Virus record (IMG/VR): IMGVR_UViG_3300033997_000243
Span: 186,001-250,000 of that record
Strand: one strand, 5' to 3'
Length of the DNA: 64,000 nt
In this document: positions 13,925-35,315 of the stretch, piece by piece
How the letters are laid out: each line of letters opens with the position of its first letter
Numbering within the stretch: the stretch's first letter is position 1
Made by a program: the position numbers and the translations under genes
The notes under the pieces: model-generated
Told to the model about the DNA's origin: nothing
What the model saw: only the letters and a program-made list of their open reading frames with translations
The model's database searches: none

Positions 13925-14215
13925 ATGGGACTTCCAGTAATAGTAAAGGGAAATAACAGCACAGGCCATCCACCTGGTTTTCCACCAACTCCAGCCGTTC
14001 AAGCAAGTACAAAAGTATTTGCTGCAAAACAACCTATTGTGCGTCAAGGTGACAAATATAAAATACATTGCTTTAACGGCAGTTGTCATGTGCCTACAGT
14101 GGTAAAAGCAAGTACAAAAGTTTTCATTCAAGGAAAAGGTTGTACACGATTGGGCGATAAACTTAGCTGCGGTGATACAGCAAGTGGTGGAATTTCAAAT
14201 GTGAGGGCAGGTTAA
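13925..14215 (+). CDS. PAAR-repeat spike tip protein (T4 gp5.4-like)
   Basis: GH..FPP, three PAAR-like repeats (STKVF..K.PIVRQGD), H/C metal ligands, RLGD.LSCG. Confidence 0.9.
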   Translation: MGLPVIVKGNNSTGHPPGFPPTPAVQASTKVFAAKQPIVRQGDKYKIHCFNGSCHVPTVVKASTKVFIQGKGCTRLGDKLSCGDTASGGISNVRAG

Positions 14216-14649
14216 TGTTCTTTCCTTCAGTTAAATTGGTTAATACGTCTGTAGAGCAAGCTGTGTTTTCTTTTAGATACAGTGACGCTAACCTTGATTT
14301 CGATTCTCAGCCTGATGAATTCATCTATGATATAGATGCAGTCATTCAGGCTTTTCTGCTTTTATTGGCCACTTCAAAAAGAGAACGCTGGTGGCGGCCA
14401 GAATATGGAACATACGATCTTGAAAGATTATTGTTTGAGCCTTTCGATATTGTTACTGCCGACAGAATTGCAGAATCTATTAGGTCTACGAATGAACTAA
14501 GAACAAATGGAAATACTCGCATAGAAATAAGTGGTGTTTCTGTTCAACCTGTTTACGATTCGCAATCTTATTATACAACATTGAGAATAAGTGTGCCTTC
14601 ATTGAATGCAGAAAAGTCTGTAAGTTTTACACTAAGACGGCCAACTTGA
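14215..14649 (+). CDS. baseplate wedge / sheath initiator, gp25-like
   Basis: LL.T...ER.WRPEYG....LLFEP motif. Confidence 0.9.
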   Translation: MFFPSVKLVNTSVEQAVFSFRYSDANLDFDSQPDEFIYDIDAVIQAFLLLLATSKRERWWRPEYGTYDLERLLFEPFDIVTADRIAESIRSTNELRTNGNTRIEISGVSVQPVYDSQSYYTTLRISVPSLNAEKSVSFTLRRPT

Positions 14650-14663
14650 TATAGGGGAATTTT

Positions 14664-20782: not shown

Positions 20783-20794
20783 TACTGCCCTTTT
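20774..20794 (+). terminator. intrinsic terminator
   Basis: GGGCAGT-AAT-ACTGCCC followed by TTTT. Confidence 0.7.
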
Positions 20795-20834
20795 ACATAA
20801 TTTATAAGCATGTGGTTTTACGGGAAATATAAAA

Positions 20835-23189
20835 ATGATTCCAGATCGTTTGATTTTAACACCAGAAGGCGAAGCAGCACTGTTATCCGCAAGTGAGGGT
20901 GGCGTGTTTATTCGCCCTTCTTCGTTTGTTGTAGGAAATTTTTCAGGAACTGAGCCTGAAACAGTTTCAAGCGTTGTACTAGGTGATGTTATTTATTCTG
21001 GCCAACTTTTCTATGTAGAAGTGTTGAATGGCAATACTGCACGTTTCACAATAGAATTACCTGTACTTCCAAACACTGTTAGCATTACAGAAGCCATTGT
21101 TTATTTGGATGATAATGTTCCGCTTGGCCGTGTACGTACAACAGTTCCATATGAAAAAGCTGCGGGGCGCAAAATGCGTTTAAGCTTTATGCTGCATTTG
21201 GATCAAGATCTTGCAAGTGTAATCGATGTTACTTTAAGTACATTCGGATCAGTTCCTGCTTGTGTTGGTGTTGATTTTCTTCCACCAGCTGGAACAGCAA
21301 TAACAAATGCTGTTTTAGTTTTAGATCTGCAAAGCAATGCTGATGGTGAATATTCTCCTGAATTAGCATATCGCTATGGTGCAGGTGGAAATGTTTGGGG
21401 CTTTAGCGGCTATTCAAGATTACACAGCGGAAACGTAACTCCGGTTGATGGCGCAAACTTTTCTGCGGATAGTGTTGTAGAAGATTTTGAATTAGAAAAC
21501 GATGACGAAGTTATTTGTAGCATTAGTGCTGGTAAAGGTGCTGGCGAAACTCGTCGTTTCAAAATTGTAGCTGGAGCATTTGCAGCAACTAATATTGGAT
21601 TTTCTGATATTGATTCTGGAAGTGTCATTCACATCTGGAAACAAATTGTAGGTGCTGGAAGTTCTGGTAGTGGTTTACCAGATCGTAATGGTGTTGGGCC
21701 AGATTGGGTTTTAGCTGCTGGTGAACAAAATGCACAACCTCGCTGGATTCCTCAAAGCGTAGGTAAATCAAGAACTCGTGGTAATATTTATAATCCTCCG
21801 GGAAAATTAAAGATTACACAAATTACCTTGACTCCAACACAAGCGCAAAGAACATTTTTGCTTTACAACGAAGATCCTTTAACAACTGCTGATCCAGAAA
21901 GTTGGATTCATCGTTATAGCTATAGAAAAAATAACAACTATAGCATGATAAGTTTGTCTGGTGCTAATCAACAACGTACCGCATATACATTGGCAAACAA
22001 CAGACTTGAGTTCACTGAAGATGTCCCAGTCGAAGTTACAATCGACGCTCGTTTATTTGAGTTAGAGCCAAGTACAGGATCTCGAATTGATATTCGTAGT
22101 CGTGAACATACTGGTGATGGAATTACACGCGAATTCGATTTACCAGCTATTCCAGAAGATCCAACAAAAGTATTAACTTTCTTTGAACGTACTTTAACTA
22201 ATCCAGCATCATACACAATTGATCTGGTTCGAGGTAAAATTGTTTTCCTTGAAGCAATTGGTATTGGATTACGCTTTGAAGTAAATGTGATAATTCACGA
22301 AGCAGTTGAAAACTTCGCTACGCTAATGCACTCACATTTGGTTACTGTTAGAGATCGTGCTAATGTTTTCGTTCTTCCATTTACACCAAGCAGCAAAGAA
22401 AATGTATTCATTAACGTGAGCGGTTTACACGTTTATAAATCAGAATACGTTTTGGTTGGAAACAAAGTTGTTATGAACAACGATGTTGATCTTGATGTTC
22501 CAATAGAATTCATGATCTTTGAAAACGTAAGATCTGAAGGCACTCCTGATACTGCTTTACGTGGAATGGTTGTTGATGCCATGCTAAGTGGTAACTCAAT
22601 TGAAATGGTACGAAGCGGTGCTGACAGTTTACGCATAGAATTGCCTGAAATAAAATTGTTGAGTGGCAAGAACTGCAAAATCGCCGGACAATTTCCAGAG
22701 TTTGAAGTAAGTTTTGATGCTGGCTCTGAAGTCGGTGGCGGTTACACAGCAATATCGCTTAGTGAATCTGGTGACTCAATTGGTGAGCTGACGTTAACAC
22801 ATCGAATCGATGTTAAAAAAGATTTGTTGGTTAATATCAATGCACATTTTGAAGCGCAGTTGGGTCCTGGTTTTAAATCAAGTTCTGGTACAGAAGAAAT
22901 GCAATTTGCATTAGGTTTCAAAACTTTATCAACAAAAGAACCTGAATTTGGCAGAAACTTAAAGGGTACAGGAACAGCCGGTTTTGCGGTAAGTGCTCCA
23001 GATTCAACCGGAAAAATGGCAATGGCGAATGGTTCAGTAGGTGATGCCGTTACTTTAATTGCTGCGAATAATCCACAAGGTTACGTGGAGATAATTGCAA
23101 AAGTTAAAATAATAGGTGCGGAACTTAGTTCGTATGAATCAAAAATTCGTATATCATTGAATGGTATTGTTGTGCCTATTATTAATTAA
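20835..23189 (+). CDS. baseplate-anchored tail fibre / fibre base protein
   Basis: N-terminal LT..G..AL typical of fibre anchors; GDG.TREFDLP-type repeats. Confidence 0.65.
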   Translation: MIPDRLILTPEGEAALLSASEGGVFIRPSSFVVGNFSGTEPETVSSVVLGDVIYSGQLFYVEVLNGNTARFTIELPVLPNTVSITEAIVYLDDNVPLGRVRTTVPYEKAAGRKMRLSFMLHLDQDLASVIDVTLSTFGSVPACVGVDFLPPAGTAITNAVLVLDLQSNADGEYSPELAYRYGAGGNVWGFSGYSRLHSGNVTPVDGANFSADSVVEDFELENDDEVICSISAGKGAGETRRFKIVAGAFAATNIGFSDIDSGSVIHIWKQIVGAGSSGSGLPDRNGVGPDWVLAAGEQNAQPRWIPQSVGKSRTRGNIYNPPGKLKITQITLTPTQAQRTFLLYNEDPLTTADPESWIHRYSYRKNNNYSMISLSGANQQRTAYTLANNRLEFTEDVPVEVTIDARLFELEPSTGSRIDIRSREHTGDGITREFDLPAIPEDPTKVLTFFERTLTNPASYTIDLVRGKIVFLEAIGIGLRFEVNVIIHEAVENFATLMHSHLVTVRDRANVFVLPFTPSSKENVFINVSGLHVYKSEYVLVGNKVVMNNDVDLDVPIEFMIFENVRSEGTPDTALRGMVVDAMLSGNSIEMVRSGADSLRIELPEIKLLSGKNCKIAGQFPEFEVSFDAGSEVGGGYTAISLSESGDSIGELTLTHRIDVKKDLLVNINAHFEAQLGPGFKSSSGTEEMQFALGFKTLSTKEPEFGRNLKGTGTAGFAVSAPDSTGKMAMANGSVGDAVTLIAANNPQGYVEIIAKVKIIGAELSSYESKIRISLNGIVVPIIN

Positions 23190-23201: not shown

Positions 23202-24725
23202 ATGGATGATATTACAATTCGTATTGAAGCATTTGAAAACAGATCTGATCTTGATGGAGCAAGAGCAAAAACTTCAGAATTCGGATCAGATGTTGCTTTC
23301 GTACAAGTAGAAGAACCAGATCCGCTTAATATAAAATTTGCGTACAATGCCCAATCAGGTGTTTTATCTTTAATCCGTGGGCCTGATGATATTATTCAGG
23401 CCACTGGTTTTCTTACGCAAAAAAGTTTGGGAACTGGAAGAAGAGGAAAGAAAGGAAAAAGAGGCAAAGACGGTCGTGATGGGAAAACTGGTTACGATGG
23501 TCGTGATGGAAAATCTGGATGTCCTGGAATTCAAGGTGTAAAAGGAAAGAAAGGACTTCCAGGTCGTGATGCTGATGATGGCCCAATTGGGCCAATAGGT
23601 AAAGCTGGTTGTGGTGGTGCTGAAGGTGAAGAAGGTGAAAGAGGAAATAAAGGAATAATCGGCAATGAAGGATCTCAAGGTTTAATGGGATCTAGTTGCA
23701 AGCAAGGGCCGGATGGCCCTGACGGTGAAAAACCTTTGGAAACAGTTTTATTTTCTGACGTTCCACCAGTAGATAATCTGCTTGCTTTTATTTGGGCAAA
23801 ACCTGTCAACAGAGATCAAGTAGATCCAACAGATCCATTGCCGCCAATAGATACTCCGTCACCTTTAAATGGAAGAGTAGATAGTTTATCAATGAATGTT
23901 CCTCCGGTCGGTGCTGGTTGGTATCAAGCAATTCTTTATTTTAAAGTGAATTCTTTAAGTGGTGGAGTTGGGCCTTTTAACTATAAATGGTCTGGTGATT
24001 TTTCGACAAACGCAAATCTTTCAGTAGTTGATACTGGAATGACATCTGCAAACTTGAATTTGAAGTGTAGAATTTATATTGCTGGAACAGAAACCAGAAA
24101 AATTACTGGTGGAATTCGTTGTACAGTAACAGACGTAGGTAACGGCAACAATCCACTACTGTTAGATGCCACTTACACATTCAACATTGTTGCGACGGCT
24201 TCTGGAGGCGGTGACAGTGGAGGCGGTGGTGGAGGCTGTATCGTTTTTGGTCAACGTGTTAATTTAGTAAATGGTGAGCAAATTCAAGTTCAATCTATTT
24301 TACACGGTGACAGTTTAATCGGCGCAAGCATAGAAAGTTTGCCGGACAGCTCTAATGGAAACTCTAAATTTTTAGATTGGTTCACTTCTGATCTTAAATC
24401 GAAAAATACAACTGTCACGGCTATGTCTGTTAAACACGGAACTTACCATAGTTACTACAAAATAAATAATGTTTTGAAAATAACTTTGGAAGAGAACATG
24501 CTTTGCTTGCGCGGAGGCTATTGGTCTTTTAGACGAGTTAAAGATCTTCGTGTTGGAGACTATTTATATCATCGAACAGAAGGTGCTAAAGAAATTCTCA
24601 GCATTGAACAAATAAGTGAACAAGTTAAGACAGTATCTTTAGATGTTGAGACATCAGACACTTACTATGTTGAAGATTATTTAGTTCACAATCTGGATGT
24701 CGGTGGGCCTGTGATTAAGAAATAG
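23202..24725 (+). CDS. collagen-like tail fibre protein with a C-terminal Hint domain
   Basis: about 33 Gly-X-Y triplets, a beta domain, poly-Gly linker, then CIVFG...LVHN. Confidence 0.8.
   Translation: MDDITIRIEAFENRSDLDGARAKTSEFGSDVAFVQVEEPDPLNIKFAYNAQSGVLSLIRGPDDIIQATGFLTQKSLGTGRRGKKGKRGKDGRDGKTGYDGRDGKSGCPGIQGVKGKKGLPGRDADDGPIGPIGKAGCGGAEGEEGERGNKGIIGNEGSQGLMGSSCKQGPDGPDGEKPLETVLFSDVPPVDNLLAFIWAKPVNRDQVDPTDPLPPIDTPSPLNGRVDSLSMNVPPVGAGWYQAILYFKVNSLSGGVGPFNYKWSGDFSTNANLSVVDTGMTSANLNLKCRIYIAGTETRKITGGIRCTVTDVGNGNNPLLLDATYTFNIVATASGGGDSGGGGGGCIVFGQRVNLVNGEQIQVQSILHGDSLIGASIESLPDSSNGNSKFLDWFTSDLKSKNTTVTAMSVKHGTYHSYYKINNVLKITLEENMLCLRGGYWSFRRVKDLRVGDYLYHRTEGAKEILSIEQISEQVKTVSLDVETSDTYYVEDYLVHNLDVGGPVIKK
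24237..24692 (+). other. Hint (intein-like) domain 1
   Basis: block A C-I-V-F-G; block F/G VSLDVE...YYV..YLVHN; residue after HN is Leu; block B His replaced (TLEE). Confidence 0.85.
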
Positions 24726-24736
24726 GTAGGTATTTT

Positions 24737-25381
24737 ATGTTGACGAAAGTTCCAACTAAATTAATTTCAGCGCCTCAAGGAACAAACGGTCAAAGTCTTG
24801 TTGTTCAGGATAAAAGAATAACAGCTCAATCTACTGCAACTCAAACAGTTTCACCTATAGAAGATTGGTTTTATGATGCAAGCGTTGGTGTTCTCACAAT
24901 TCGTTTGTTGAATGGAACAACTCAAACTTTAGGTGGATTTCCAATATTATCTGATATTCCTGAAGGCCCACAAGGAGCACAAGGAGAACCAGGAATTGAT
25001 GGAAAAGATGGTCGTGATGGTCGTGATGGTCGTGATGGCGAAGCTGGTTGTGTAGGTGCAGCTGGTGAAAAAGGTGATGACGGTGATGATGGCCGTGACG
25101 GATTAGAAGGGCCAGTTGGCCCACCAGGTATTCAAGGATGTGAAGGCCCAAGAGGAAAACGTGGGCCAAAAGGTGAAGATGGAGATCAAGGCCCACCTGG
25201 AAAACAAGGTCTTCCAGGAATTGAAGGGCCACCTGGAAAAATGGGAAAACAAGGGCCACCTGGAAGAATAAATATTATTGTAAGTGAAACTGATCCAGGT
25301 CCAAGTTTAGGTAATGGTGGAATTTGGGTTAATCCTTTAATTGGTCAGATAGATGATGATACTGATCAATTTTTTACGTAA
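24737..25381 (+). CDS. collagen-like fibre protein
   Basis: about 33 Gly-X-Y triplets; (GGTCGTGAT)3 DNA repeat; C-terminal DPG...G.IWV. Confidence 0.85.
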   Translation: MLTKVPTKLISAPQGTNGQSLVVQDKRITAQSTATQTVSPIEDWFYDASVGVLTIRLLNGTTQTLGGFPILSDIPEGPQGAQGEPGIDGKDGRDGRDGRDGEAGCVGAAGEKGDDGDDGRDGLEGPVGPPGIQGCEGPRGKRGPKGEDGDQGPPGKQGLPGIEGPPGKMGKQGPPGRINIIVSETDPGPSLGNGGIWVNPLIGQIDDDTDQFFT

Positions 25382-25393
25382 GGAATTTTTAGC

Positions 25394-25888
25394 ATGAGTG
25401 GTTTAACAAAATTAAACTTATCTATGGTAAGTCCACCACTTCAAAATGGCGGAGTTATTGCGTCAGGCCAAAGTCTCACTGTAGATCCAAAAACAATAGA
25501 TCTTTCTGAATTTAGTGGCTACTATGATCGTACACAAGGAATACTAACTTTAAATATTCCTACGATTGGAAAAATTAATATTGGAAATTTTCCAACATCT
25601 GCGGATATTGGTACAGGACGCACAGGGCCAAGTGGTCGGGATGGTGTAGCAGGTGTTGATGGTTTAATCGGTGAAACTGGTCAAAAAGGTTTGCAAGGTT
25701 GTCGTGGGCCAGAAGGCCCACAAGGTCGTCAAGGTGAACGTGGGCCGCGAGGTCTAACTGGGCCGCAAGGTGAACAAGGTATTCAAGGTATTCAAGGCAA
25801 TGACGGTCGTGATGGACGAGTTTTAATTTTTGTTCAAAGTGAAGATCCCGGAAGCGTTGGGGCTGGTGCGCTCTGGGTACGGCCCTAG
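25394..25888 (+). CDS. collagen-like fibre protein
   Basis: about 22 Gly-X-Y triplets; paralogous N- and C-terminal caps. Confidence 0.85.
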   Translation: MSGLTKLNLSMVSPPLQNGGVIASGQSLTVDPKTIDLSEFSGYYDRTQGILTLNIPTIGKINIGNFPTSADIGTGRTGPSGRDGVAGVDGLIGETGQKGLQGCRGPEGPQGRQGERGPRGLTGPQGEQGIQGIQGNDGRDGRVLIFVQSEDPGSVGAGALWVRP

Positions 25889-25945
25889 TAGGTTTGGTTC
25901 TCTCTGGATTATTTAGATCCGAATTTAATTTAAGGAAAATTTAAG

Positions 25946-26410
25946 ATGAAACAACGCAAATTATTTCTACAATCTAGATCGTCTGAATCAGTTGAAAATT
26001 TCATTCAGACAGTAAATTCTCTGGCTCTTAATATGCGTAAAGAACTAAAGAAATTATTTCCAAAATTTATTACGGATGTTCGGGTAAGAAATGACGAGTT
26101 AGGTCGATACATTCTGATTGATTTTATAAATGTAGATCCAAGCGAAGCAACAACTCGTAATAAAGAGGAAGCCAGCGCTAGATTCAGATTTATAGTAAGC
26201 TTTGCTGATTTTATGAATAATCCAAATTCAGTTAAAGGTTTTGAAGTAGAGCCTTTAATGGGTGTGAAAATTAAACATACCAAACATGGATTAGATTATA
26301 AACATATCTCAGATAAAGATATGGGTCGAACACTAGACTTACTGTTAAGCTGGTTTAAATCTCAACGCAACGCCCTGAACAAACTGACACCGAAAGATAA
26401 GGATTTATGA
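25946..26410 (+). CDS. hypothetical protein, paralogue of 26407..26889
   Basis: LFPKF, IDFIN and WFKSQ..AL..L shared with the neighbour. Confidence 0.7.
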   Translation: MKQRKLFLQSRSSESVENFIQTVNSLALNMRKELKKLFPKFITDVRVRNDELGRYILIDFINVDPSEATTRNKEEASARFRFIVSFADFMNNPNSVKGFEVEPLMGVKIKHTKHGLDYKHISDKDMGRTLDLLLSWFKSQRNALNKLTPKDKDL

Positions 26411-26889
26411 TGAAACTTTTCTCGCTATGTATGGATTCACAAACACTGACAAGTTTATCCTTGGATGCAGCTGAAGCCAAATTGAATGCTGAAAATGCTT
26501 TGGAAGAATTCAAGAGCAAAATGAAAATTCTTTTTCCAAATTTTATGCTCAGCGCTAAAATCAAAAACATAATGTCTGGTGAATCACTTGTAATTGATTT
26601 CGCAAATATCTCTGACAAAGATCAGGCTCCACATGGAATTCTTCACAATGTTAGCGGCTTCTTCACAATCATAATGGATGTGAATTACAGCGGTAAAATG
26701 TCGAAACCTATAGAAACATTTCAGATGGAAATGATTCGTGGTGGTGTAAGTCGTAGAGTTCAAAGTTACGGTGTTAAACAATTCAGAAAAATTTCTGGTA
26801 ATTCACCTAGCGAATGTTTATCAAAATTGTTTAAATGGTTTGAGAAAAACGCTGAAGCATTACGCAGTTTGCCTGTTAGCGTTTATTAA
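26407..26889 (+). CDS. hypothetical protein, paralogue of 25946..26410
   Basis: LFPNF, IDFAN and WFEKN..AL..L. Confidence 0.7.
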   Translation: MMKLFSLCMDSQTLTSLSLDAAEAKLNAENALEEFKSKMKILFPNFMLSAKIKNIMSGESLVIDFANISDKDQAPHGILHNVSGFFTIIMDVNYSGKMSKPIETFQMEMIRGGVSRRVQSYGVKQFRKISGNSPSECLSKLFKWFEKNAEALRSLPVSVY

Positions 26890-26909
26890 GTTGTTTAGGG
26901 GAAATAAAA

Positions 26910-29900
26910 ATGGCTCGATTACGCATAAGATCAATTTATAACAACAAATGGCTTGATGTTTGTAATCATCCAGTGTCTTTTAGATCTCCAGACAACAGAT
27001 CTTGGATTCCATTTGACATTAAGCGTATGAGTGTGCGTGACGGTGGCAATTTAAACTGGTTAGAAATTGATTGTAAACCCGATCCACTTTTTGATGAACC
27101 GTGTGCGTTCAAACAAATTGGTAGTGTCAATTGTCCAACTGGAATTGACACTATGGAGTTGGGAAGTGGTGATGGAACTGGAAGTGATGGATTACCTTTT
27201 GATCTTATAACAGGTTATCCAGCGGGTTATGATATGCCAGATGCTGGTGACACAGGTTTTATGTTAGAACGTGCGATAGGAAGTCCTCGCGGTTTTGCAC
27301 TTAAAAGACCTGCATTAAACTATGCTCTTGAATATTACGATCCAGAAGGTGTTACAAGTAATCTAGGTCGTGGCAATTATGCGAACCCAAACTATTTGTG
27401 GGCAACTACTTTTAGTGGTGGCGCTCAAATCACTGAAACAATTTATGATCTTGGTCAAGTTGCTGGATGGTACGAAGTAATATTTGCTTCATACGACGAT
27501 GTAGGTATTAGTGTTGACGTTTATTATTTAGGTCAACGTATCGCAACAACGTGTGGTCGTATTAAAGATCGTTACAAAATTGAATTCTTTTTTGATGCAC
27601 TTGCTGGCGAAGGTGAAAGTCGTGTAATGATACGTGTTCGCGGTCAAGAAAGTACACGTTGGACATACATGGTAACTGGGCCAAAACAAATGCTCAGTGT
27701 TTATGGTTTAGATTTAGAAGATCCACTGCATCAGGTTTTAATCAGAACAGATGAATACAGTGGAACTCCTTTATTTCCTGCACCGTGCCACGCAACAGTT
27801 TTTCCTCGTGACTACAAAACAAATGATGGCAAATGGTTTTACGAATTTCACCACTATGTAGGTGAAAATGCAGATCCAAACGAACTTGCCTTAATGGTTA
27901 TTGATTACACAAGTTGGATGAACCTTGATAAATTTGAAGTTTATCACGGAGGCTTGCGTATCGGTAGCACAATGGATCCAAAAAGTTTGTTGGGAATGAT
28001 TCAATTTTTGTGGGAACCAAATCGTTTTAGTATTCCCGTTCCAGATTTAATGATTCGTGTGAGTGCTGATGTTCGTCAATACGGCGAAGATATTATGAGT
28101 TGGTACTACACATTATTCTGTCAAAACACTCCTGGATACAGAGAAAATCCTTGGGACTGTGAAACTCCTGTTGCTGGTTTAAGTAGCATGGGTCACGGTA
28201 GCACCGAAGATAACTATGACATGGATAACGGTGTTGAGAACGGAGTAGTCAGTATTAAAGCAACAGGTTACGGAGATTTTACTTATACTGTAACCGTCTT
28301 TGACATTGACGGAAAATTAGTTGCGTATACTGAAGGTAAGAGAACTACATTTACTCAATTTTTTATAAAGGCGGCTGAACATGGTGATACTCGTAAACGC
28401 ATTGCTGTACGTATTGATGCACCAATCGGAAGTTCTTGGACTTACTTTGTAGGATGTCCAGTAGAATTACTTGATATTGAATTAGATGATAAAACAATTC
28501 CAGTTTGTAATGATGAATTTGAGATCACTGTTAATGATGTGCAGTGTGTAAAAAGTGATTTTGCTACATTTACAGTTACTTCGAGCTTACCGGTTCCAAA
28601 TGATGTTCATGTAAGTGTTTCGACGCAAGACGGAACTGCGAAAAGTTCTGGCGGTGCAGGATCTGATTATGCTGGATTACCAGACATTTATGGTATTTTT
28701 CAGGATAATGATTCACCCACAGAAACCTCAAACTTCGATAGTAAGACACTGCGTTTTGGTGTACAGAATTGGCCGAATGCTAGTGTTGTATTTGATAATG
28801 GTTGGGGAAATTTGGCAAACCCTGAGCATAAAAATGCTGCGTCTACAAATGATCCTTCTCATATAATGGGAAGAAACACCAACTACTGGCAAAACTTGGA
28901 AACAAGTTCATTCGCTAATCTTTCGCCTGATGCAAAATTAGTTGTGAATGCTTGGAAACATCGTTTAGGAAATTTGAATGGCAAAAGTTGGATTATCTTA
29001 ACGGATAGTGCAGATCCTGCTGGTGATTTTTCTGAAATATGTTCCAACTTTATTCAAAGCATGATAAACATTTATGGCATGAATGTTCATGTTGTGCGTG
29101 ATGATTATACAACTCAAAATTTTACACCATATGATATTATTACGATTGCGAATAGTAGACGTTGGGGTGAAGTTGGTCAATTCAGTGCGGCTGGTGTGCA
29201 TTATATGGCGCGGGTACTTCAAGGATATAAAAGTCCTGTTGGTATTGCCATTGCAGATCAAGTTAAACAAAATCGAGTGCTTCATTGTTATTTTAGAGCG
29301 ACAAACCAACGTCTTGCCCAAAACATTTTAATTCGTGATGTAATGAATTGTTTTGTTGGTGTAAAGTTTTACTGGAACGAGCAGCTGACAAAAAATCCGA
29401 CTAATGCTGATGTTACGCTTGGTCGTCATCTTGCTCAATATCCTGATACTCCATTGTTGACAGGTATTTCTGAAGCAAAAGCTGATTCAGATTTTACTGT
29501 ATTGGATGTTCTTTATATTCCAGCACCGACAACAGTTGATCCTGATTACGTTGCGAAATCTGAAATAGTTACTATACCAACTGGGGCAACTTCAGCTCAA
29601 GTTAAGGTAACAACTTTAGATCCAAAAGCAAGCCCTATTGGGAAAAATTTCTATTTGAACTTAACTGGAACTGACAGCGGAACAATTGTAGATGCTCAAG
29701 GTATTGCAACTTTTGCTAACTCCAATACTTCACCACAACCAGTAGGTGATTTGAACTTCTCACCCTCTTATTTTACTTCACACAGTAAAAATACTTGGGA
29801 TAACTCCGGTGTTAGAGTTTATGGAAGTGCGGTTGCGTTTGCAATAGATTATTCCGGCTTTCCTACCCAAACAAATCCAGGTGGCGTAGAACAGCCTGGA

Positions 29901-30269
29901 AAAATTGCTGTTGTTGAAGCAAATGGTGGTATGGGTACGCAAGCTCAACTTAATAAATACTATACTGCTGGTGATTATCCGTATGATCCTGCACTTACTT
30001 ATGTTTATAAGTGGGAATACTCAGTTAAATTTAATGATGGAAATAGAAAGCTTACTGTTCCGTCGATAGCAACTACTTACGATGTAATGAACAGAATAAC
30101 ATCGTTTGCTGTGAATCAATCGAACGAAGAACATAGCGGATCAGGTTACTCGCTTGTTGTAGAGGCAATATTATGGATCAAAGCAAGTAATGGTGTTGAA
30201 ATGAAAAGTAACTTGGTTACAATCAATATTGTTAGTGATCCAATTTTTGCAGGTGGAAACATTCCGTAA
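26910..30269 (+). CDS. multidomain virion/fibre protein: three beta-sandwich repeats plus a split Calx-beta domain
   Basis: repeated ...V(Y/F).G..IA.T...IRV...W.Y...P modules; T.DGTAKS ... DY...V.IP.G. Confidence 0.7.
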   Translation: MARLRIRSIYNNKWLDVCNHPVSFRSPDNRSWIPFDIKRMSVRDGGNLNWLEIDCKPDPLFDEPCAFKQIGSVNCPTGIDTMELGSGDGTGSDGLPFDLITGYPAGYDMPDAGDTGFMLERAIGSPRGFALKRPALNYALEYYDPEGVTSNLGRGNYANPNYLWATTFSGGAQITETIYDLGQVAGWYEVIFASYDDVGISVDVYYLGQRIATTCGRIKDRYKIEFFFDALAGEGESRVMIRVRGQESTRWTYMVTGPKQMLSVYGLDLEDPLHQVLIRTDEYSGTPLFPAPCHATVFPRDYKTNDGKWFYEFHHYVGENADPNELALMVIDYTSWMNLDKFEVYHGGLRIGSTMDPKSLLGMIQFLWEPNRFSIPVPDLMIRVSADVRQYGEDIMSWYYTLFCQNTPGYRENPWDCETPVAGLSSMGHGSTEDNYDMDNGVENGVVSIKATGYGDFTYTVTVFDIDGKLVAYTEGKRTTFTQFFIKAAEHGDTRKRIAVRIDAPIGSSWTYFVGCPVELLDIELDDKTIPVCNDEFEITVNDVQCVKSDFATFTVTSSLPVPNDVHVSVSTQDGTAKSSGGAGSDYAGLPDIYGIFQDNDSPTETSNFDSKTLRFGVQNWPNASVVFDNGWGNLANPEHKNAASTNDPSHIMGRNTNYWQNLETSSFANLSPDAKLVVNAWKHRLGNLNGKSWIILTDSADPAGDFSEICSNFIQSMINIYGMNVHVVRDDYTTQNFTPYDIITIANSRRWGEVGQFSAAGVHYMARVLQGYKSPVGIAIADQVKQNRVLHCYFRATNQRLAQNILIRDVMNCFVGVKFYWNEQLTKNPTNADVTLGRHLAQYPDTPLLTGISEAKADSDFTVLDVLYIPAPTTVDPDYVAKSEIVTIPTGATSAQVKVTTLDPKASPIGKNFYLNLTGTDSGTIVDAQGIATFANSNTSPQPVGDLNFSPSYFTSHSKNTWDNSGVRVYGSAVAFAIDYSGFPTQTNPGGVEQPGKIAVVEANGGMGTQAQLNKYYTAGDYPYDPALTYVYKWEYSVKFNDGNRKLTVPSIATTYDVMNRITSFAVNQSNEEHSGSGYSLVVEAILWIKASNGVEMKSNLVTINIVSDPIFAGGNIP

Positions 30270-30272
30270 TCA

Positions 30273-30292
30273 AAAGGGGCTTCGGCCCCTTT
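30273..30292 (+). terminator. C(UUCG)G hairpin, possibly bidirectional terminator
   Basis: AAAGGGGC-TTCG-GCCCCTTT. Confidence 0.65.
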
Positions 30293-30311
30293 CACCAAGA
30301 AGAAGAATTTT

Positions 30312-33300
30312 ATGGCAGGAACTCCATTCACAACTATTTACGAAAATTTAGGATCTAATGCGACAACTGTTCCTGGAATTTCGTGGAAGTTTGACCATGA
30401 ATACATTATCTACACGATTGAAAGAAACGCAGATGATGAAGTAGGTGTTGTTTATATAAATACACATGCGGCTTCTCTTCGAGCTATTGATCGTGGATTT
30501 TTAGCTGTAACGGTTGACGCATGGATTGTTCTTGATCGTCAAACAATGCAGATTAAAAGCGAATCACGTAAAGGTGATGCTTGTCCAATTTTAAAAGTTT
30601 TAGAGCGCCCGATTACAGTTGGCGTATCGGACTTTACTTCAGAAAATTGGGAAGTTTATTATTCAGGCCCTGGAGTTGTACAATTAAATATTGACTGGCC
30701 TGATGATTATGAATACGTTATCTTTGTTCACGCAACAGAGCCTCCTGGTCGCTATCCAGATCTTAAGTGGTCTATATGCGCTCACTTCTTTTGTCCGGCA
30801 GCAATGAATGCGAGTGATATAAATGGCGGTGGTTATTTAAAACCGATTGAAGGTGCGTCAGGTGTAATGATGTATCGTGGTCGGTTTTCTAGTCCAACTG
30901 GCAGACATATTCGTAGATTCGACAAAGGTGATGGTTTAATAGCGTATATACTTCGCAGAAAATTTAGAACTGATACCAAAGCAACAACTGAATTTAATAG
31001 TTGGAAGCAACACACGTTTGCACTTCCTAATGGCATACAAGCTGGTGGAAATTGGCGTGATGCTAAACCTTATGCTTGGCCTGATGATACTGAAATAATG
31101 GTAGTGTCACAAGATCCTAAAGGTAGCACAGAAATGGCTACTTCTTATTATTTCACAGATTCAAACATTCAGAATACAACTCAAATAAATTGGCGTGAAC
31201 GCGGTTTATTGTATGATGCGGGTTATGATCATTATATAGAGTTGTTGAAACCTATTTGGCAAAACCGTGGAACCAAACATATCCGTTCAAGTGATGGAAG
31301 AATTTTTGCAGCGTGGGAAAAACTACCCACGTTAGATGTTCCACCGCCAGAACCTCCACCGCCAGTTGATCCTGTAATTGATTGTCGCGCTTGCGTACCA
31401 GCTGGATCTTTGTGGGAGCAAACTGCAAGTATTGAAGTTCGTTTTGTTAAGCCTGATGATTGGCAATTACGCAATTATCGCTATGATTGGCACGGTGACA
31501 TCGGCAACGGTTCTGTGGAATTAATTGGAACCGAAGCTAATGGAAGAATTGCAAAAATTCGTTTTGTAAAAATGTTAGAACCTACCGATGATGGAATAAT
31601 GTTTCCTATCAATGTGGCGGTTACAGTTTATGATATGGATTATGCTTCGGCTGGAGTACAAGATAGTGATACAGCAATCATCGAATTTGAATTACCTTGT
31701 ATTGTAGTGGCGAATCAGCCGGATATAAGTATAGAGGATATTACTGTACTTGAGCAAGACATCAATCATGTCGTACAGGTTACAGTTTCTTTGTCTGAAC
31801 CAGCAACTGCGGAAGCACTAACAGTAGATTGGCAAACTCGTGATGGTACTGCGAAAAGCGATCTGAGTGTTAAAACACTTGCTAGGGATGATTTAGGTAA
31901 TCCATTTATAACCGTTATAGAAAGTTTAGATAGTAAAGTCAGGACTTATATAGATGGTTGTTTTCCAAAATGGTATGCTGCAAGTTTTTACGACAGATTG
32001 AATACACCTAAATTTCAAACAACATTTTTATTCACGCAAAACATAATTAACTGGTTATCCAGAAATAAAGTTGGAGGTCAAGTTTTATTATTAGGTGATA
32101 AGACGAACGATCCTTACAATGTTAAACTATCTAACGCAAATGATTTTTTCCCTGTATTCGATGCCGCAGCAACAGCCACAGGAAGAACTTTAGTTGTTGA
32201 ATATGTCTATGATATAGTTCCATCTAAAGCATATTTCGATTCCTTCGATTGCATTATTTATATAGGCAGTCACTATACAGGCGATCAAGTTAATTCACCT
32301 GAATTTATTACTGCACTTGTAGAAAGTCATTTAGGTGGAATCGGAGCAGCATTTATATCTGATCATGGTGTTGATGATATTAATGGGGCTGGTTTTTTCA
32401 AAGGCGTTAATGAAGTTTTGATCAATGCTTTTGGTATAGGACTAAAGGGCAATATAGATCGCGGATCTATGGTACTTACTGTGGAAAACGCAAAAGCTAC
32501 TTTAGGTGATCATCCATTGTGGGCCGGATTAAGCGGCCAAATAGATGCAGGATCTTCAGAAGCGTATGTTGATGCAATAGATAGTGAACCGGATTATATA
32601 AGTGGTCGAGGAACTTTAGTCTTTGCTGTCGGTGAGCAACACAAAATAATCGAGGTTACAATTGTTGGTGATACTACAATTGAGAATGACGAATATTTTG
32701 AAATAATGATCTCGAATAATAGTCGAGGTCAGATAGTAAAAAATGTTGGTCGTGTTACACTTCAAGATGATGATGCTCAACCTTGCGGTGTCACAACAGG
32801 ATCTGGTGGTACTGGTGTCACAGAAACAGTTCATAATATGGGATCTGAATCAGGCCAAGTAACAGTTGGTTTTGATATGTTCGGTGTTCCAGATATGATG
32901 GAAATTTTTTACGATGGAGTACGCGTAGCCGCAACAAGCAGAGATTTAAGTAATCCATACCCAAGTGGAACTGGACGCTATTACAATCTTCCAAATGGAA
33001 ATAAAGATCTTCCAACTGAAGTAAGTGGTGCTGGTACTCTATCATTTTATTATGAAGGGCCACCAAACAAACCTTCAACAATCATGATTCGTATGACTGG
33101 GCCAGACGGAACTGCATGGAATTACAATTTAGATTGTCCGATTCCTGTTGAGGAGCCGCCACCGCCAGCAGTAACAATTGCTGGAATAAGATTTAGAAAT
33201 TTAGATCCAGCACCTGGAGCAGGAGCAATTGCAATAGGTTATATTGATTTTATAAAATCGGATAGCACTATTTACGATTTTGGTAATGTACTGCAAGATA

Positions 33301-34226
33301 ACTATGTAAATTGTACTTTTGAGCATGGATATACAGAAGGACAACCTGTGCAATATCAAAATAGTTATAAGCCGCGTCAAGCAATTAATGGCTATCAAGA
33401 AGGATCTCAATGCAGTCACCGCGATTACTATGGCCCATTCACAAATGATGCGTACTTATTAATTCGTTTATCTCAAATGACGGATATAATAGGTTTCAAC
33501 ATGATGGATTGGCATTATTGTAATGACAATGGCGCTCCAGTGTTTCGCGCTCCAGCACTTCCATACAGCATAGATCTTTTAGATCAAAATGATAATGTGA
33601 TTTGCACACAAACAGTAACAAGTTATGTTAGTCCGGCGGCAGATACAGTTGGTTACGTTCCAATACAATTCCCTTGCGATCCTGTAATTGGTGGAACAAG
33701 TGTAGGTGGCGGAAGTGCAGATTGTTTTGCATACGGAACTTTGATAACTATGTCTGACGGTTTTGAAAAAGAAATCGAAGATATTGTTATTGGAGAAACA
33801 GTTAAAACTTTTTCCATAGAAGGATTAACTGATGCAAATGCTGAAAATCCTGTGGACTATTTAACTTGGTCAACTTACGATCTGCAAATAAAAGAATCTA
33901 CTGCCGCAGTAACATCAGTTTCTTATCACGAAACTAATCTACATCATAAGATTTGGATAGAAGGCAAAATAGATCCTATAAGGGTCACTGCGGAACATCC
34001 ATTCTTAGTTAAGTTTTCTGATAGAAATGATTGGGTATTTGATTACGCTCGTTATCTTAAAGCAGGTGATACTGTTTTAGATTCAAGTGGTCGGCAAATA
34101 AAAGTTCTATCGAATCAATTGATATACGGAAATATTAAAACTGTCCGTCTGGATGTTGAAACGCTAGATACTTATTTTGCTGGTGGAATTCTTGTACACA
34201 ACAAAGATACTACAATACAACAGTAG
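30312..34226 (+). CDS. multidomain fibre/adhesin protein with a split Calx-beta domain and a C-terminal Hint domain
   Basis: Pro linkers; ISIEDITVLE..DGTAKS / DY..G.L.FA.GE..K.I.V.I.GD...E.DE.F; ends CFAYG...LVHN. Confidence 0.8.
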   Translation: MAGTPFTTIYENLGSNATTVPGISWKFDHEYIIYTIERNADDEVGVVYINTHAASLRAIDRGFLAVTVDAWIVLDRQTMQIKSESRKGDACPILKVLERPITVGVSDFTSENWEVYYSGPGVVQLNIDWPDDYEYVIFVHATEPPGRYPDLKWSICAHFFCPAAMNASDINGGGYLKPIEGASGVMMYRGRFSSPTGRHIRRFDKGDGLIAYILRRKFRTDTKATTEFNSWKQHTFALPNGIQAGGNWRDAKPYAWPDDTEIMVVSQDPKGSTEMATSYYFTDSNIQNTTQINWRERGLLYDAGYDHYIELLKPIWQNRGTKHIRSSDGRIFAAWEKLPTLDVPPPEPPPPVDPVIDCRACVPAGSLWEQTASIEVRFVKPDDWQLRNYRYDWHGDIGNGSVELIGTEANGRIAKIRFVKMLEPTDDGIMFPINVAVTVYDMDYASAGVQDSDTAIIEFELPCIVVANQPDISIEDITVLEQDINHVVQVTVSLSEPATAEALTVDWQTRDGTAKSDLSVKTLARDDLGNPFITVIESLDSKVRTYIDGCFPKWYAASFYDRLNTPKFQTTFLFTQNIINWLSRNKVGGQVLLLGDKTNDPYNVKLSNANDFFPVFDAAATATGRTLVVEYVYDIVPSKAYFDSFDCIIYIGSHYTGDQVNSPEFITALVESHLGGIGAAFISDHGVDDINGAGFFKGVNEVLINAFGIGLKGNIDRGSMVLTVENAKATLGDHPLWAGLSGQIDAGSSEAYVDAIDSEPDYISGRGTLVFAVGEQHKIIEVTIVGDTTIENDEYFEIMISNNSRGQIVKNVGRVTLQDDDAQPCGVTTGSGGTGVTETVHNMGSESGQVTVGFDMFGVPDMMEIFYDGVRVAATSRDLSNPYPSGTGRYYNLPNGNKDLPTEVSGAGTLSFYYEGPPNKPSTIMIRMTGPDGTAWNYNLDCPIPVEEPPPPAVTIAGIRFRNLDPAPGAGAIAIGYIDFIKSDSTIYDFGNVLQDNYVNCTFEHGYTEGQPVQYQNSYKPRQAINGYQEGSQCSHRDYYGPFTNDAYLLIRLSQMTDIIGFNMMDWHYCNDNGAPVFRAPALPYSIDLLDQNDNVICTQTVTSYVSPAADTVGYVPIQFPCDPVIGGTSVGGGSADCFAYGTLITMSDGFEKEIEDIVIGETVKTFSIEGLTDANAENPVDYLTWSTYDLQIKESTAAVTSVSYHETNLHHKIWIEGKIDPIRVTAEHPFLVKFSDRNDWVFDYARYLKAGDTVLDSSGRQIKVLSNQLIYGNIKTVRLDVETLDTYFAGGILVHNKDTTIQQ
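33723..34202 (+). other. Hint (intein-like) domain 2
   Basis: block A CFAYGT.I.M.DG..K.IEDI..G; block B TAEHPF; block G LVHN; residue after HN is Lys. Confidence 0.9.
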
Positions 34227-34323
34227 TGTTTTTAAAATGGCAAAACCTGCTAATTTAAAGTTATAGACAAAACTTCTTCTGTTTCATTGTATTCAGAAGA
34301 AGTTTGTGTACTGGGAGTTTAAA

Positions 34324-34545
34324 ATGCCAAAGGCAGTTGTTTTGAGAGTCAGGGACGTTAAAAACGTCCTTGATCCTTTTCATATAAAGAATTTTCATTT
34401 AGGTGGCTGGCGTGTTCGTCATGAAAACAAATGGATCAGAATGGTTCCAGAAAATACTCTGATTAAAAATCCAGATCATGATCCGGCTGTACACGCACCA
34501 GATGATACTGAATTTCCGTTATATACACAGGTGGTATCAGAATGA
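34324..34545 (+). CDS. small virion-associated protein (start MPKAV)
   Basis: GGGAG SD; R..N.W pattern like the N-terminus of 26910. Confidence 0.55.
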   Translation: MPKAVVLRVRDVKNVLDPFHIKNFHLGGWRVRHENKWIRMVPENTLIKNPDHDPAVHAPDDTEFPLYTQVVSE

Positions 34546-35315
34546 TAACTAGACTACCTTTAGCAATGATCAACGCTGGATCAACAAGTTTAGCAGGACA
34601 AAATGTTACAGTTGTTCAGCCGGGAGTATTAGCTGCACAAGATCCGTCTGCAACTGTTCAACCTGCTGTTATACAAGGAACGTATGACGCGGATAGTGGA
34701 ACAGTTACAATAGTCAATGCTGATAATTCGATAGTTTTAATTTCTGGTTTTCCAACAATAAGAAGTTTACCAACTGGACAACGTGGGCCAGAAGGTAAAC
34801 AAGGTATTTCTGGAGTAGCAGGAAGAAATGGTCGTGATGGTCGTCCTGGAGAACAAGGTTGTCCTGGAGTAAAAGGTGATCGTGGCTTGCGAGGCCCAAT
34901 TGGGCCAGAAGGCCCACGAGGGCCGCAAGGAGAAATCGGCCCCAAAGGTGACAAAGGTGACAAAGGTGACAAAGGTGATGCAGGTATTGATGGCCTTGAA
35001 CCAGAATATGTAAAGACAAGTCGTGGAGCATCTATTTATTTACAAAGAAGCGGTGGAACAATTCAAAGTGGATTTTTTGAAAATGCTCTACAAGACAGAA
35101 CAATAACTTTACTGTTTCCGAGAAATTTAATAAACGGTGTTGTAAGTATTGTATTGTTCTTTAAGAATCCAAGTAGCTACCAAGCTCTGAATTATGAAAT
35201 AGGTGAATATTTCTACGATGATTTAGAAATTGGTGGTGTAACAATAACTCTTAAAGGAACTCCACCTGCACAGCTTGAGCCTTGGCAGTTCTGGTGGTTT
35301 GTAATGGGCGATTAA
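34542..35315 (+). CDS. collagen-like fibre protein with a C-terminal globular domain
   Basis: about 25 Gly-X-Y triplets; (AAAGGTGAC)3 repeat; shared N-cap. Confidence 0.85.
   Translation: MITRLPLAMINAGSTSLAGQNVTVVQPGVLAAQDPSATVQPAVIQGTYDADSGTVTIVNADNSIVLISGFPTIRSLPTGQRGPEGKQGISGVAGRNGRDGRPGEQGCPGVKGDRGLRGPIGPEGPRGPQGEIGPKGDKGDKGDKGDAGIDGLEPEYVKTSRGASIYLQRSGGTIQSGFFENALQDRTITLLFPRNLINGVVSIVLFFKNPSSYQALNYEIGEYFYDDLEIGGVTITLKGTPPAQLEPWQFWWFVMGD

What the first reader, a model, noticed from the sequence alone, without database searches (positions are those of the whole stretch)
23202..35315. Four collagen paralogues with cysteines in exact register and a 30-residue period
Seen: 23202, 24737, 25394 and 34542 share an N-cap (Y(D/N)..G.L.....GF(P/L)), and each has Gly-Cys at the 10th triplet (GCP, GCV, GCR, GCP). 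23202 and 24737 have a second Cys exactly 10 triplets later, and 23202 a third another 10 later. 23202 is basic where 24737 is acidic (GVKGKK vs GEKGDDGDD). Inference: heterotrimeric or disulfide/metal-knotted collagen fibres, unusual for prokaryotic collagens, which are mostly described as homotrimers.
Basis: partly seen in the sequence, partly recalled or inferred. Interest (0 to 1): 0.65.

Follow-up and report, generated by a model that had tools for sequence, protein, structure and literature searches.

The report
Cysteine-registered collagen fibres of jumbo phage
Four collagen-shafted tail-fibre proteins of a 320-kb jumbo phage carry a cysteine at the same spot of the triple helix in nearly every relative, and two of them look built to pair with each other, which would be a natural hetero-assembled, disulfide-stapled collagen outside animals.

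Summary
The window is part of a 319.5-kb jumbo myovirus related to Lu11, PaBG, Y3, AD1 and NCTB, the 'hairy Myoviridae'. Its baseplate module encodes four collagen-shaft proteins: A 23202, B 24737, C 25394 and D 34542. Each has a beta N-cap followed by Gly-X-Y triplets, with Cys at the X position of triplet 10.

That Cys is present in 110 of 110 orthologues from 28 loci. It is the only invariant non-Gly shaft residue, and both Cys codons are used. A wider search found a few exceptions, mostly in A.

A and B stand apart from C and D:
- their rods have equal length, 33-34 triplets (C has 23, D 25);
- the second Cys, at triplet 20, is present in both or in neither in 34 of 34 genomes, across at least 4 independent changes;
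- their charges are complementary in register;
- A lacks the N-terminal peptide shared by B, C and D.

D ends in a gp53/pyocin-like fibre tip.

My best reading is that Cys10 is an outward-facing thiol that staples fibres after lysis, and that A and B form an in-register pair. I cannot say whether that pair is one heterotrimer or two adjacent trimers. A mixed trimer of all four chains is not supported, and there is no evidence for a metal knot. No paper I could search describes any of this.

The parts
23202..24725 (+). Fibre A (507 aa). It has its own N-terminus without the peptide shared by B, C and D. Domains: N-cap at residues 45-78 (23334-23435); shaft at 79-177 (23436-23732), 29 triplets, then Cys, then 3 more; C-cap at 178-201; Ig/SprB-like middle; Hint-like end at 346-507 (24237-24722).
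   Evidence: (phrog_38766 over residues 45-500, E 1e-70)
23520..23522 (+). A Cys107, triplet 10 position X (TGT)
23610..23612 (+). A Cys137, triplet 20 position X. Its presence is coupled to B Cys135 across genomes.
23697..23699 (+). A Cys166, in the Gly position of triplet 30. It is conserved in every A orthologue of the first 28 loci.
24737..25381 (+). Fibre B (214 aa). Domains: shared N-terminal peptide (LT+xPxxhI); N-cap at residues 43-76; 34-triplet shaft at 77-178 (24965-25270); C-cap at 179-200.
25049..25051 (+). B Cys105, triplet 10 position X
25139..25141 (+). B Cys135, triplet 20 position X
25394..25888 (+). Fibre C (164 aa). It has the same N-terminal peptide, N-cap and C-cap as B but only 23 triplets (25616-25822). 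Cys103 is at 25700-25702.
34542..35315 (+). Fibre D (257 aa). Domains: shared N-terminal peptide; N-cap; 25-triplet shaft (34776-35000) with Cys107 at 34860-34862; all-beta C-terminal tip at residues 154-257 (35001-35312), like AP22 gp53 and R-pyocin fibre tips.
14215..23189 (+). Upstream baseplate context: gp25-like (14215-14649), gp6-like wedge (14664-16127), a 1551-aa tail protein (16127-20782), and a 784-aa conserved neighbour (20835-23189) that I used as the tree marker.
   Evidence: synteny

Best explanation
The four ORFs are the conserved fibre set (A, B, C, D) of the Lu11/PaBG/Y3-type jumbo myoviruses. They are encoded in the baseplate module and are the candidates for the thin 'hairs' of these virions.

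Each chain has a short beta-meander N-cap that probably nucleates and aligns the trimer, a Gly-X-Y shaft, and a C-cap or tip.

The Cys at position X of triplet 10 lies about 8 nm from the cap. It is a selected, outward-facing thiol. I propose that after lysis it oxidises to a disulfide that ties neighbouring triple helices together, as the single in-helix cysteines of collagen VI do, rather than knotting the three chains of one helix.

A and B form a dedicated in-register pair. A has no docking peptide of its own and poor self-complementary charge. It has the same rod length as B and charges that complement B. Its second Cys is gained and lost together with B's.

That second Cys lies ten triplets further on, which is one superhelical turn of a 10/3 collagen helix. 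It therefore faces the same side as the first and can reach the same partner rod.

C (short) and D (receptor-binding tip) are most likely ordinary homotrimers that share the docking peptide and the staple.

Shown here: conservation, coupling, rod lengths, charge patterns and gene context. Inferred: that disulfides form, the bundle geometry, and the identification with the 'hairs'.
For: - Kinship and synteny with Lu11, PaBG, NCTB, AD1 and HRDY3. This group is described as 'hairy Myoviridae', the hair proteins are said to be unknown, and the 272/164/210-aa 'tail fibers' (D, C and B here) are named as candidates (PMC6143709).
- Cys10 is present in 110 of 110 module proteins from 28 loci. It is invariant among 74 distinct sequences. 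TGC and TGT are both used in every paralogue. Among 50%-identity representatives of 1.84 billion proteins, 45 of 47 full-module hits have the Cys.
- The 784-aa neighbour has no conserved Cys, so the likeliest partners are the fibres themselves.
- A/B coupling at triplet 20: both or neither in 34 of 34 genomes. Five loci picked because B has it all had it in A, and four picked because B lacks it all lacked it in A. The tree needs at least 4 changes, all concordant.
- The C-cap Trp lies 117-120 residues from the shaft start in A, 119-121 in B and 86-91 in C.
- Net charge of A against B gives r = -0.79 over 24 lineages.
- In a crude interchain charge-pair score the A homotrimer is unfavourable in many lineages (window -11.5). 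A/B mixtures gain while the other pairs do not. Cognate pairs score above non-cognate pairs. All 9 new loci are positive. The in-register score exceeds shuffled B in 23 of 23 lineages.
- B, C and D share an N-terminal peptide that A lacks.
- The D tip resembles gp53 and pyocin fibre tips.
- Collagen VI precedent for in-helix Cys driving higher-order assembly (PMC3950771).
Against: - There is no experimental or structural evidence that any of these thiols is oxidised, or that the fibres lie side by side.
- Cys10 is not strictly coupled between A and B. A lacks it in L091, L098, L099 and L100 while B keeps it where B is on the contig (L098, L099, L100); L091 ends before B. Only in L092/L093 do both lack it.
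- The concordance rests on 4 independent contrasts, so the sign test gives only p = 0.125.
- The net-charge anticorrelation was weak in the independent second set (r = -0.38, not significant).
- In the PaBG and Lu11 clades the A homotrimer scores well and A/B mixing gains nothing.
- The charge score is my own crude construct. It takes the best of three registers for mixed trimers, which biases them upward.
- The outward geometry of X positions and the 10/3 repeat come from textbook collagen geometry. They were not computed on a model of these proteins.
- The link to the 'hairs' is only by candidate status in the literature.
Confidence: 0.45

Rival explanations
1. True heterotrimer. A and B chains fold into one triple helix (A1B2 or A2B1), selected by complementary charges as in designed ABC collagen peptides. 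The Cys residues lock the register.
For: - A and B have equal spacing between N-cap and C-cap.
- The A homotrimer is electrostatically poor while A/B mixtures are favourable. The effect is specific to the A/B pair and to cognate partners.
- The genes are adjacent, separated by 11-nt gaps.
- A lacks the docking peptide, so it would be carried by B.
- The triplet-20 Cys is coupled between A and B.
Against: - X-position side chains at the same level of one helix point away from each other, roughly 8 A between C-beta atoms by textbook geometry, so same-level X-X disulfides inside a helix are strained.
- A carries a Gly-to-Ala break at triplet 16 and a Cys in the Gly position of triplet 30. B does not share either.
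- A has a large C-terminal extension and B has none.
- My score cannot separate an intra-helix contact from side-by-side complementarity.
Confidence: 0.25
2. All four proteins are independent homotrimers. Cys10 is an intra-trimer staple that stabilises a proline-poor helix just after the nucleating N-cap. The second Cys in A and B is extra stabilisation of the two longest rods, gained or lost together because of shared selection such as habitat or temperature, not because they touch.
For: - Every paralogue has Cys10, including D, which has a homotrimer-type tip.
- A can lose Cys10 while B keeps it.
- A and B are the longest rods.
- Homotrimers are the rule in phage fibres and bacterial collagens.
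Against: - Three Cys per level leave one unpaired.
- The outward X-position geometry argues against pairing inside one helix.
- This reading does not explain the in-register charge complementarity, the poor A homotrimer score, the matched A and B lengths, or the missing docking peptide in A.
- Lu11-like D rods of 44-49 triplets are longer than A or B yet have only Cys10.
Confidence: 0.2
3. The cysteines are not disulfide partners. They bind a metal, carry a modification, or link covalently to another virion protein or a host-surface molecule.
For: - The distance from the anchor is fixed in all paralogues.
- Virions are assembled in a reducing cytoplasm.
- A Hint-like thioester-forming domain sits on A and on ORF 30312.
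Against: - The neighbouring 784-aa protein has no conserved Cys.
- No His/Cys cluster surrounds the site.
- Outward X positions cannot form a tri-thiolate site within one helix.
- The A/B coupling at triplet 20 points to a Cys-Cys pair.
Confidence: 0.08
4. The register is a relic of recent duplication or gene conversion among the paralogues and has no function.
For: A, B and C are tandem genes.
Against: - The paralogues are only 29-36% identical.
- The four-gene set predates the split of clades that are themselves about 30% identical in a neighbouring gene.
- Both Cys codons are used.
- The sequence flanking the Cys differs between A and B.
Confidence: 0.02

Closest known systems
Collagen VI (and the collagen IV 7S region): single cysteines inside the N-terminal part of the triple helix that drive higher-order assembly
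   Same: A lone Cys sits within the Gly-X-Y shaft near its N-terminal end. It is conserved in all paralogous chains. In collagen VI such cysteines are needed to join triple helices into dimers and tetramers. The shaft matches collagen VI chains as generic collagen.
   Different: There are no vWF-A domains and no coiled-coil chain selection. The shafts are far shorter (23-34 triplets against about 112). The setting is viral, with assembly in a bacterial cytoplasm. The role of the Cys is untested here.
C1q and the collectins: bouquets of collagen stalks held by N-terminal interchain disulfides; C1q is an A-B-C heterotrimer with A-B and C-C bridges
   Same: Several paralogous collagen chains come from clustered genes. 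Cys is in register near the N-terminus. An A-B-specific bridge is suggested by the coupled Cys. Globular tips recognise targets.
   Different: The Cys lies inside the helix, not in a pre-collagen segment. There is no gC1q domain; the D tip looks like phage gp53 and pyocin tips. Chain lengths differ between paralogues, so an A-B-C trimer is excluded.
Collagen-like phage tail fibres and bacterial collagen-like proteins (for example S. aureus phage 80alpha 'Fiber Upper' gp68, PDB 6v8i; BclA, PDB 1wck; PHROG 'collagen like minor tail')
   Same: A Gly-X-Y shaft lies between non-collagen caps in a virion fibre. The Pfam Collagen and PHROG tail-fibre families match.
   Different: Those are described as homotrimers without cross-links. 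Here there is a family-wide in-helix Cys, a fixed N-cap, and a coupled pair of paralogues.
AP22 gp53 and R-type pyocin tail-fibre tips (PF21882 Gp53-like_C)
   Same: The C-terminal domain of D matches. Foldseek's top hit is 4mtm (E 4.5e-4), followed by 6ct8, 6cl5, 6cl6 and 6cxb. D orthologues in L098 and L099 carry PF21882.
   Different: The model has low confidence (pLDDT 62). The window's own D gave no Pfam hit. The shaft is collagen rather than beta-helix.
Hint / bacterial intein-like (BIL) C-terminal autoprocessing domains
   Same: The end of A is 31% identical to the end of ORF 30312-34226, and that ORF matches PT-HINT and intein models. A Gly run precedes the first Cys, and an His-Asn pair lies near the end.
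   Different: The window's A reads TLEEN where relatives read T-x-x-H-P, so the block-B His is missing. Pfam does not detect the domain in A. Activity is untested.

Membership tests
Collagen triple-helix repeat (PF01391) | Uninterrupted Gly-X-Y repeats scoring above the Pfam gathering threshold | tested here: met
   All four score 42.7-61.1 bits against a cut-off of 27.2. Run lengths are 23-34 triplets.
Collagen triple-helix repeat (PF01391) | The chains actually form a trimeric triple helix | not testable with these tools
   This needs CD, melting curves or a structure. The one multimer job gave no verdict.
Fibre set of Lu11/PaBG/Y3/AD1-type ('hairy') jumbo myoviruses | Orthology and conserved gene order in the baseplate module: gp25-like, gp6-like, giant tail protein, about 780-aa protein, A, B, C, ..., D | tested here: met
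   tblastn hits. Annotated neighbourhoods of NCTB, Lu11, PaBG, AD1 and HRDY3. 22 IMG/VR loci. 11 further contigs.
Fibre set of Lu11/PaBG/Y3/AD1-type ('hairy') jumbo myoviruses | The proteins are in the virion and form the hairs | not testable with these tools
   RefSeq calls the AD1 homologues 'virion structural protein'. The literature says the hair proteins are unknown and names these fibres as candidates.
C1q-like heterotrimeric collagen | Three different chains of matching collagen length in one helix | tested here: not met
   C has 23 triplets and D 24-49, against 33-34 in A and B. Only A and B match in length.
C1q-like heterotrimeric collagen | C-terminal gC1q/TNF-like domain | tested here: not met
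   No Pfam C1q hit. The D tip resembles gp53 and pyocin fibre tips.
Collagen VI-type assembly cysteine | A single conserved Cys within the N-terminal part of the triple-helical domain in each chain | tested here: met
   Cys is at triplet 10 position X in all four, and is conserved.
Collagen VI-type assembly cysteine | The Cys forms disulfides between triple helices | not testable with these tools
   This needs non-reducing gels or disulfide mapping.
Collagen III-type cystine knot | Two adjacent Cys (Cys-Cys) at the end of the helix | tested here: not met
   There is no Cys-Cys pair. Cys10 and Cys20 are single and lie mid-helix.
Hint / BIL autoprocessing domain (C-terminus of A) | N-terminal nucleophile Cys, block-B T-x-x-H, and a C-terminal His-Asn | tested here: inconclusive
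   Cys346 follows a Gly run and His-Asn is present. Block B reads TLEEN in the window's A but T-x-x-H-P in ORF 30312 and in AD1-like and NCTB A proteins. Pfam finds nothing in A.

The most novel reading that the evidence does not exclude
A and B are chains of a natural heterotrimeric, or covalently hetero-paired, collagen. Partner choice is set by in-register charge complementarity and locked by cysteines spaced one 10/3 superhelical turn apart. That would be a viral collagen assembly code evolved independently of animal collagens, and the molecular basis of the 'hairs' of hairy jumbo phages.
Probability: 0.4. Interest if true: 0.8.

Novelty: new variant of a known kind. Interest (0 to 1): 0.62.

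Why it matters
Reviews describe bacterial and phage collagen-like proteins as homotrimers that lack cross-links and higher-order assembly (PMC8968730). That limits their use as models and as materials for heterotrimeric animal collagens.

A natural, short, hydroxyproline-free pair of chains that selects its partner by charge and fixes the register by cysteines would give three things:
- a ready-made scaffold for recombinant heterotrimeric or cross-linked collagens;
- a test bed for rules of chain selection;
- candidate proteins for the unexplained 'hairs' of a widespread group of jumbo phages, including phages of Erwinia, Dickeya and Pseudomonas that are studied for biocontrol.

If the cysteines turn out to be only intra-trimer staples, the finding is still a clean, family-defining motif for annotation.

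Tried and rejected
- Megablast of the A-C region against phage records found only a 39-base chance-like match. Relatives appear only at the protein level.
- The N-cap has no solved relative by sequence; all PDB hits fall on the collagen part. The AlphaFold2 model of the module gives a confident three-strand meander only (pLDDT about 90 for residues 40-64, mean 71.5). Foldseek found no significant match for it.
- Complex prediction with A(45-205) plus two copies of B(38-214) gave no verdict: score 0.32 against a mark of 0.34, controls 0.00-0.01. I count it neither for nor against binding.
- I looked for a conserved Cys partner in the 784-aa neighbour and found none.
- I had hypothesised that Cys10 of A and B are obligate partners. 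L098, L099 and L100 reject this, since A lacks Cys10 while B keeps it.
- The net-charge anticorrelation between A and B was strong in the first set (r = -0.94). It was weak in the independent set (r = -0.38), so I rely on it only in combination (r = -0.79).
- A mixed trimer of all four chains, and C/D heterotrimers, are rejected on shaft lengths and on charge scores.
- Pfam did not detect the Hint domain in A. A BLASTP comparison with ORF 30312 did.
- Literature: no paper I could search mentions collagen, cysteines or heterotrimers for these proteins. The Lu11 genome paper is not held, and I could not read the Y3 paper.
- I did not use the read-mapping tools.
Full report
What the window is. 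The window is bases 186001-250000 of a 319,518-bp viral contig with direct terminal repeats. GC content is about 38%. Genes 14215-23189 encode a gp25-like protein, a gp6-like baseplate wedge, a 1551-aa tail protein and a 784-aa conserved protein. The four collagen ORFs follow in the same strand block. Protein searches place the phage with Phage NCTB, Pseudomonas phages Lu11, PaBG and HRDY3, Dickeya phage AD1 and Erwinia phages of the Y3 type. Gene order is the same around the collagen genes in these phages. The group has been called 'hairy Myoviridae'. The authors state that the proteins forming the hairs are unknown and name the three small 'tail fiber' proteins of 272, 164 and 210 aa as candidates (PMC6143709). 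Those are the counterparts of D, C and B here. None of the papers I could search mentions collagen repeats or cysteines in these proteins.

Checking the observation. The ORFs at 23202 (A, 507 aa), 24737 (B, 214 aa), 25394 (C, 164 aa) and 34542 (D, 257 aa) all exceed the Pfam Collagen threshold. They are the only such genes in the genome. Counting from the first triplet after the N-cap, each has Cys at the X position of triplet 10. A and B have a second Cys at the X position of triplet 20. A's third Cys comes 29 residues later, not 30, and replaces the Gly of triplet 30.

Conservation. I collected the orthologous loci from five annotated phages and 22 IMG/VR contigs. Every genome with enough sequence has one A, B, C and D, and two genomes have extra copies. 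All 110 proteins that carry the N-cap module have Cys at triplet 10, position X. Every A has the Cys at triplet 30, position 1. Among 74 distinct module sequences that are 23-47% identical to the first sequence, the invariant columns are the shaft glycines, one N-cap Gly and this Cys. TGC and TGT are both used in every paralogue, so selection acts on the residue and not on the DNA. A profile search of 1.84 billion representative proteins found about 47 proteins with the full module. Of these, 45 have the Cys and two do not. A word search seeded with one of the exceptions, plus contig look-ups, showed where the rule breaks. A lacks Cys10 in five contigs of two lineages. B lacks it in one lineage. 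One C-type protein lacks it. Cys10 is therefore a strong family hallmark but not absolute, and A is the chain that most easily does without it.

Architecture. B, C and D begin with a shared peptide (Leu-Thr-Arg/Lys, then Pro, then a hydrophobic residue) that A lacks. All four then have an N-cap of about 35 residues, which AlphaFold2 models as a three-strand beta meander with pLDDT near 90. It has no detectable solved relative. The shafts have paralogue-specific lengths that are conserved across clades:
- A: 29 triplets, then Cys, then about 3 more triplets
- B: 34 triplets
- C: 23 triplets
- D: 24-25 triplets, or 44-49 in Lu11-like phages

A, B and C share a C-cap ending in a hydrophobic-Trp motif. 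That Trp lies 117-120 residues from the shaft start in A, 119-121 in B and 86-91 in C. A and B rods are therefore equally long in five of six clades. D ends in an all-beta domain whose low-confidence model (pLDDT 62) best matches the tail-fibre tip of Acinetobacter phage AP22 gp53 and the R-pyocin fibre tips. D orthologues in two contigs carry Pfam Gp53-like_C. These differences exclude a trimer that mixes all four chains in register. They also make D, and by its simple cap-shaft-cap design C, most likely ordinary homotrimers.

The A-B pair. Four independent lines single out A and B.

1. Rod length. The rods are equal in length, as described above.

2. The triplet-20 Cys. It is present in both A and B or in neither. 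In the first 28 loci it occurred in both in the window clade and the PaBG clade, and in neither elsewhere. I then picked five more contigs because their B has the Cys, and all five A proteins had it. I picked four whose B lacks it, and all four A proteins lacked it. On a tree of the neighbouring 784-aa protein from 34 genomes, the state changes at least four times, also when only well-supported branches are counted. A and B agree in 34 of 34 genomes. With four contrasts the sign test cannot go below p = 0.125, so this is strong but not yet formally significant. The sequences around the Cys differ between A and B, which argues against gene conversion.

3. Charge. The net charge of the first 29 triplets of A and B is anticorrelated. 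The figures are r = -0.94 in the first 15 lineages, -0.92 over six clade means, -0.38 in nine new lineages, and -0.79 overall. The sign also flips between clades. A is basic and B acidic in the window and NCTB types. A is very acidic and B basic in L023 and L026. I also built a crude score of interchain charge pairs: Y of one chain against X of the next chain in the same and the following triplet. It makes the A homotrimer unfavourable in the window (-11.5), NCTB, L023/L026, L097 and L100. The B, C and D homotrimers are mostly favourable. A/B mixtures gain about 4-5 units over the homotrimers on average, and about 20 in the window. All other pairings gain about zero or lose. Cognate A/B pairs score higher than A with a foreign B (4.8 against 1.1). 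The observed in-register score exceeds the mean for shuffled B in 23 of 23 lineages. The score is my own, and it favours mixtures slightly because the best of three registers is taken. The other pairings serve as the control for that bias.

4. Docking peptide. A lacks the N-terminal peptide shared by the other three. This would fit a chain that is carried by a partner.

Mechanism. Two points rest on established collagen geometry and not on a computation here. First, X-position side chains point outward, and at one level of a helix they lie roughly 100 degrees apart around the axis. A same-level X-X disulfide inside one undistorted helix is therefore unlikely, and a three-thiolate metal site is impossible. 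Natural intra-helix knots sit at helix ends with adjacent cysteines, which these proteins lack. Second, in the 10/3 form expected for proline-poor sequences, one chain makes a full superhelical turn in ten triplets (about 8.6 nm). Cys10 and Cys20 of a chain therefore face the same side, as needed to bridge twice to one parallel, in-register partner rod. Both helical forms have been seen in one collagen crystal structure; I take that from a title cited in PMC12562938. The closest precedent for single in-helix cysteines near the N-terminal end of a shaft is collagen VI, where they are needed to join triple helices into dimers and tetramers.

From this I propose that Cys10 staples neighbouring fibres about 8 nm above their anchor once the virion is in an oxidising medium. 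I also propose that A rides on B as an in-register partner. The sequence data do not decide whether A and B share one triple helix or lie side by side. The outward geometry and A's own Gly-position breaks at triplets 16 and 30 favour two rods. The poor A homotrimer score and the missing docking peptide favour one mixed helix. The single multimer job I could run (A plus two B) fell just under the tool's mark and counts as no answer.

Comparison and novelty. Collagen-like shafts in phage fibres are well known (PHROG tail-fibre and 'collagen like minor tail' families; solved examples). [quoted passage not shown] The new elements here are these:
- a defined N-cap with a fixed in-helix cysteine across a whole family of paralogues;
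- a second cysteine one 10/3 turn further that co-varies between two paralogues;
- charge complementarity that flips sign together in both partners.

This is a new variant of a known kind. If the A-B assembly is confirmed it would be a viral counterpart of the chain-selection and cross-linking logic of C1q or collagen VI, reached independently.

Limits. No experiment supports oxidation, contact or virion location. The number of independent evolutionary events is small. The charge model is crude. The two structure models are of limited confidence. The identification with the 'hairs' is a literature-based guess.

Noticed in passing
window 24237-24722 (end of A) and 33723-34223 (end of ORF 30312-34226): Both proteins end in a Hint/intein-like domain that starts with Cys after a Gly run and ends with His-Asn. 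They are 31% identical to each other. The large ORF matches PT-HINT and intein models. The window's A reads TLEEN where ORF 30312 and the AD1-like and NCTB A proteins have T-x-x-H-P, so its N-terminal cleavage step may be dead. PaBG-, Lu11- and L023-type A proteins lack the domain altogether.
   Followed up: partly
window 25946-26410 and 26407-26889: Two overlapping tandem ORFs (154 and 160 aa) are 27% identical to each other. They have no Pfam or PHROG match. They sit between C and the 1119-aa protein. NCTB, Lu11, PaBG and AD1 have no genes of that size at this place.
   Followed up: partly
window 26910-30269 and 30312-34226: Two giant neighbours (1119 and 1304 aa) both match phrog_26008 and contain Calx-beta-like segments. 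They lie between C and D, as the 'large intein domain protein' does in NCTB.
   Followed up: no
protein P0010 (5095 aa, from the representative library): This protein carries at least seven tandem copies of the N-cap plus a short collagen stretch. Each copy has Gln where the fibre family has Cys. The module therefore also exists as an internal repeat of a giant protein, without the thiol.
   Followed up: no
L023:4540-9123 and L026:10001-11071: These relatives have extra paralogues (356-920 aa) with 33 triplets, the B-type C-cap and long C-terminal domains. All of them have Cys10.
   Followed up: no
L007:10796-11482, L010:10557-11477, L027-L031 (Lu11-like A): The Lu11-like A proteins are short. 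They end the shaft with a Cys-rich junction: Cys at triplet 28 position Y, at triplet 30 position 1, and again 8 residues later. This recalls the two-Cys junction of FACIT collagens.
   Followed up: no
L091, L092, L098, L099 (A orthologues): In this clade A has lost Cys10 and carries its distal Cys at triplet 29 position X instead of in the Gly position of triplet 30.
   Followed up: partly
window 23481-23483 region (A triplet 16) and L007 A triplet 6: There are single Gly-to-Ala breaks in the A shaft: triplet 16 reads Ala-Asp-Asp in the window, and triplet 6 reads Ala-Glu-Asp in Lu11. The other paralogues have no such breaks.
   Followed up: no
window 35834-36748: This ORF matches a PHROG labelled 'HNH endonuclease' (E 3e-28), and its PaBG and AD1 counterparts are annotated that way. 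Pfam finds no HNH or any other domain in it, and it sits inside the fibre module. The label may be a propagated misannotation.
   Followed up: no
L096:10757-11635 (minus strand): In this relative an HNH_3 endonuclease gene is inserted on the opposite strand between B and C.
   Followed up: no
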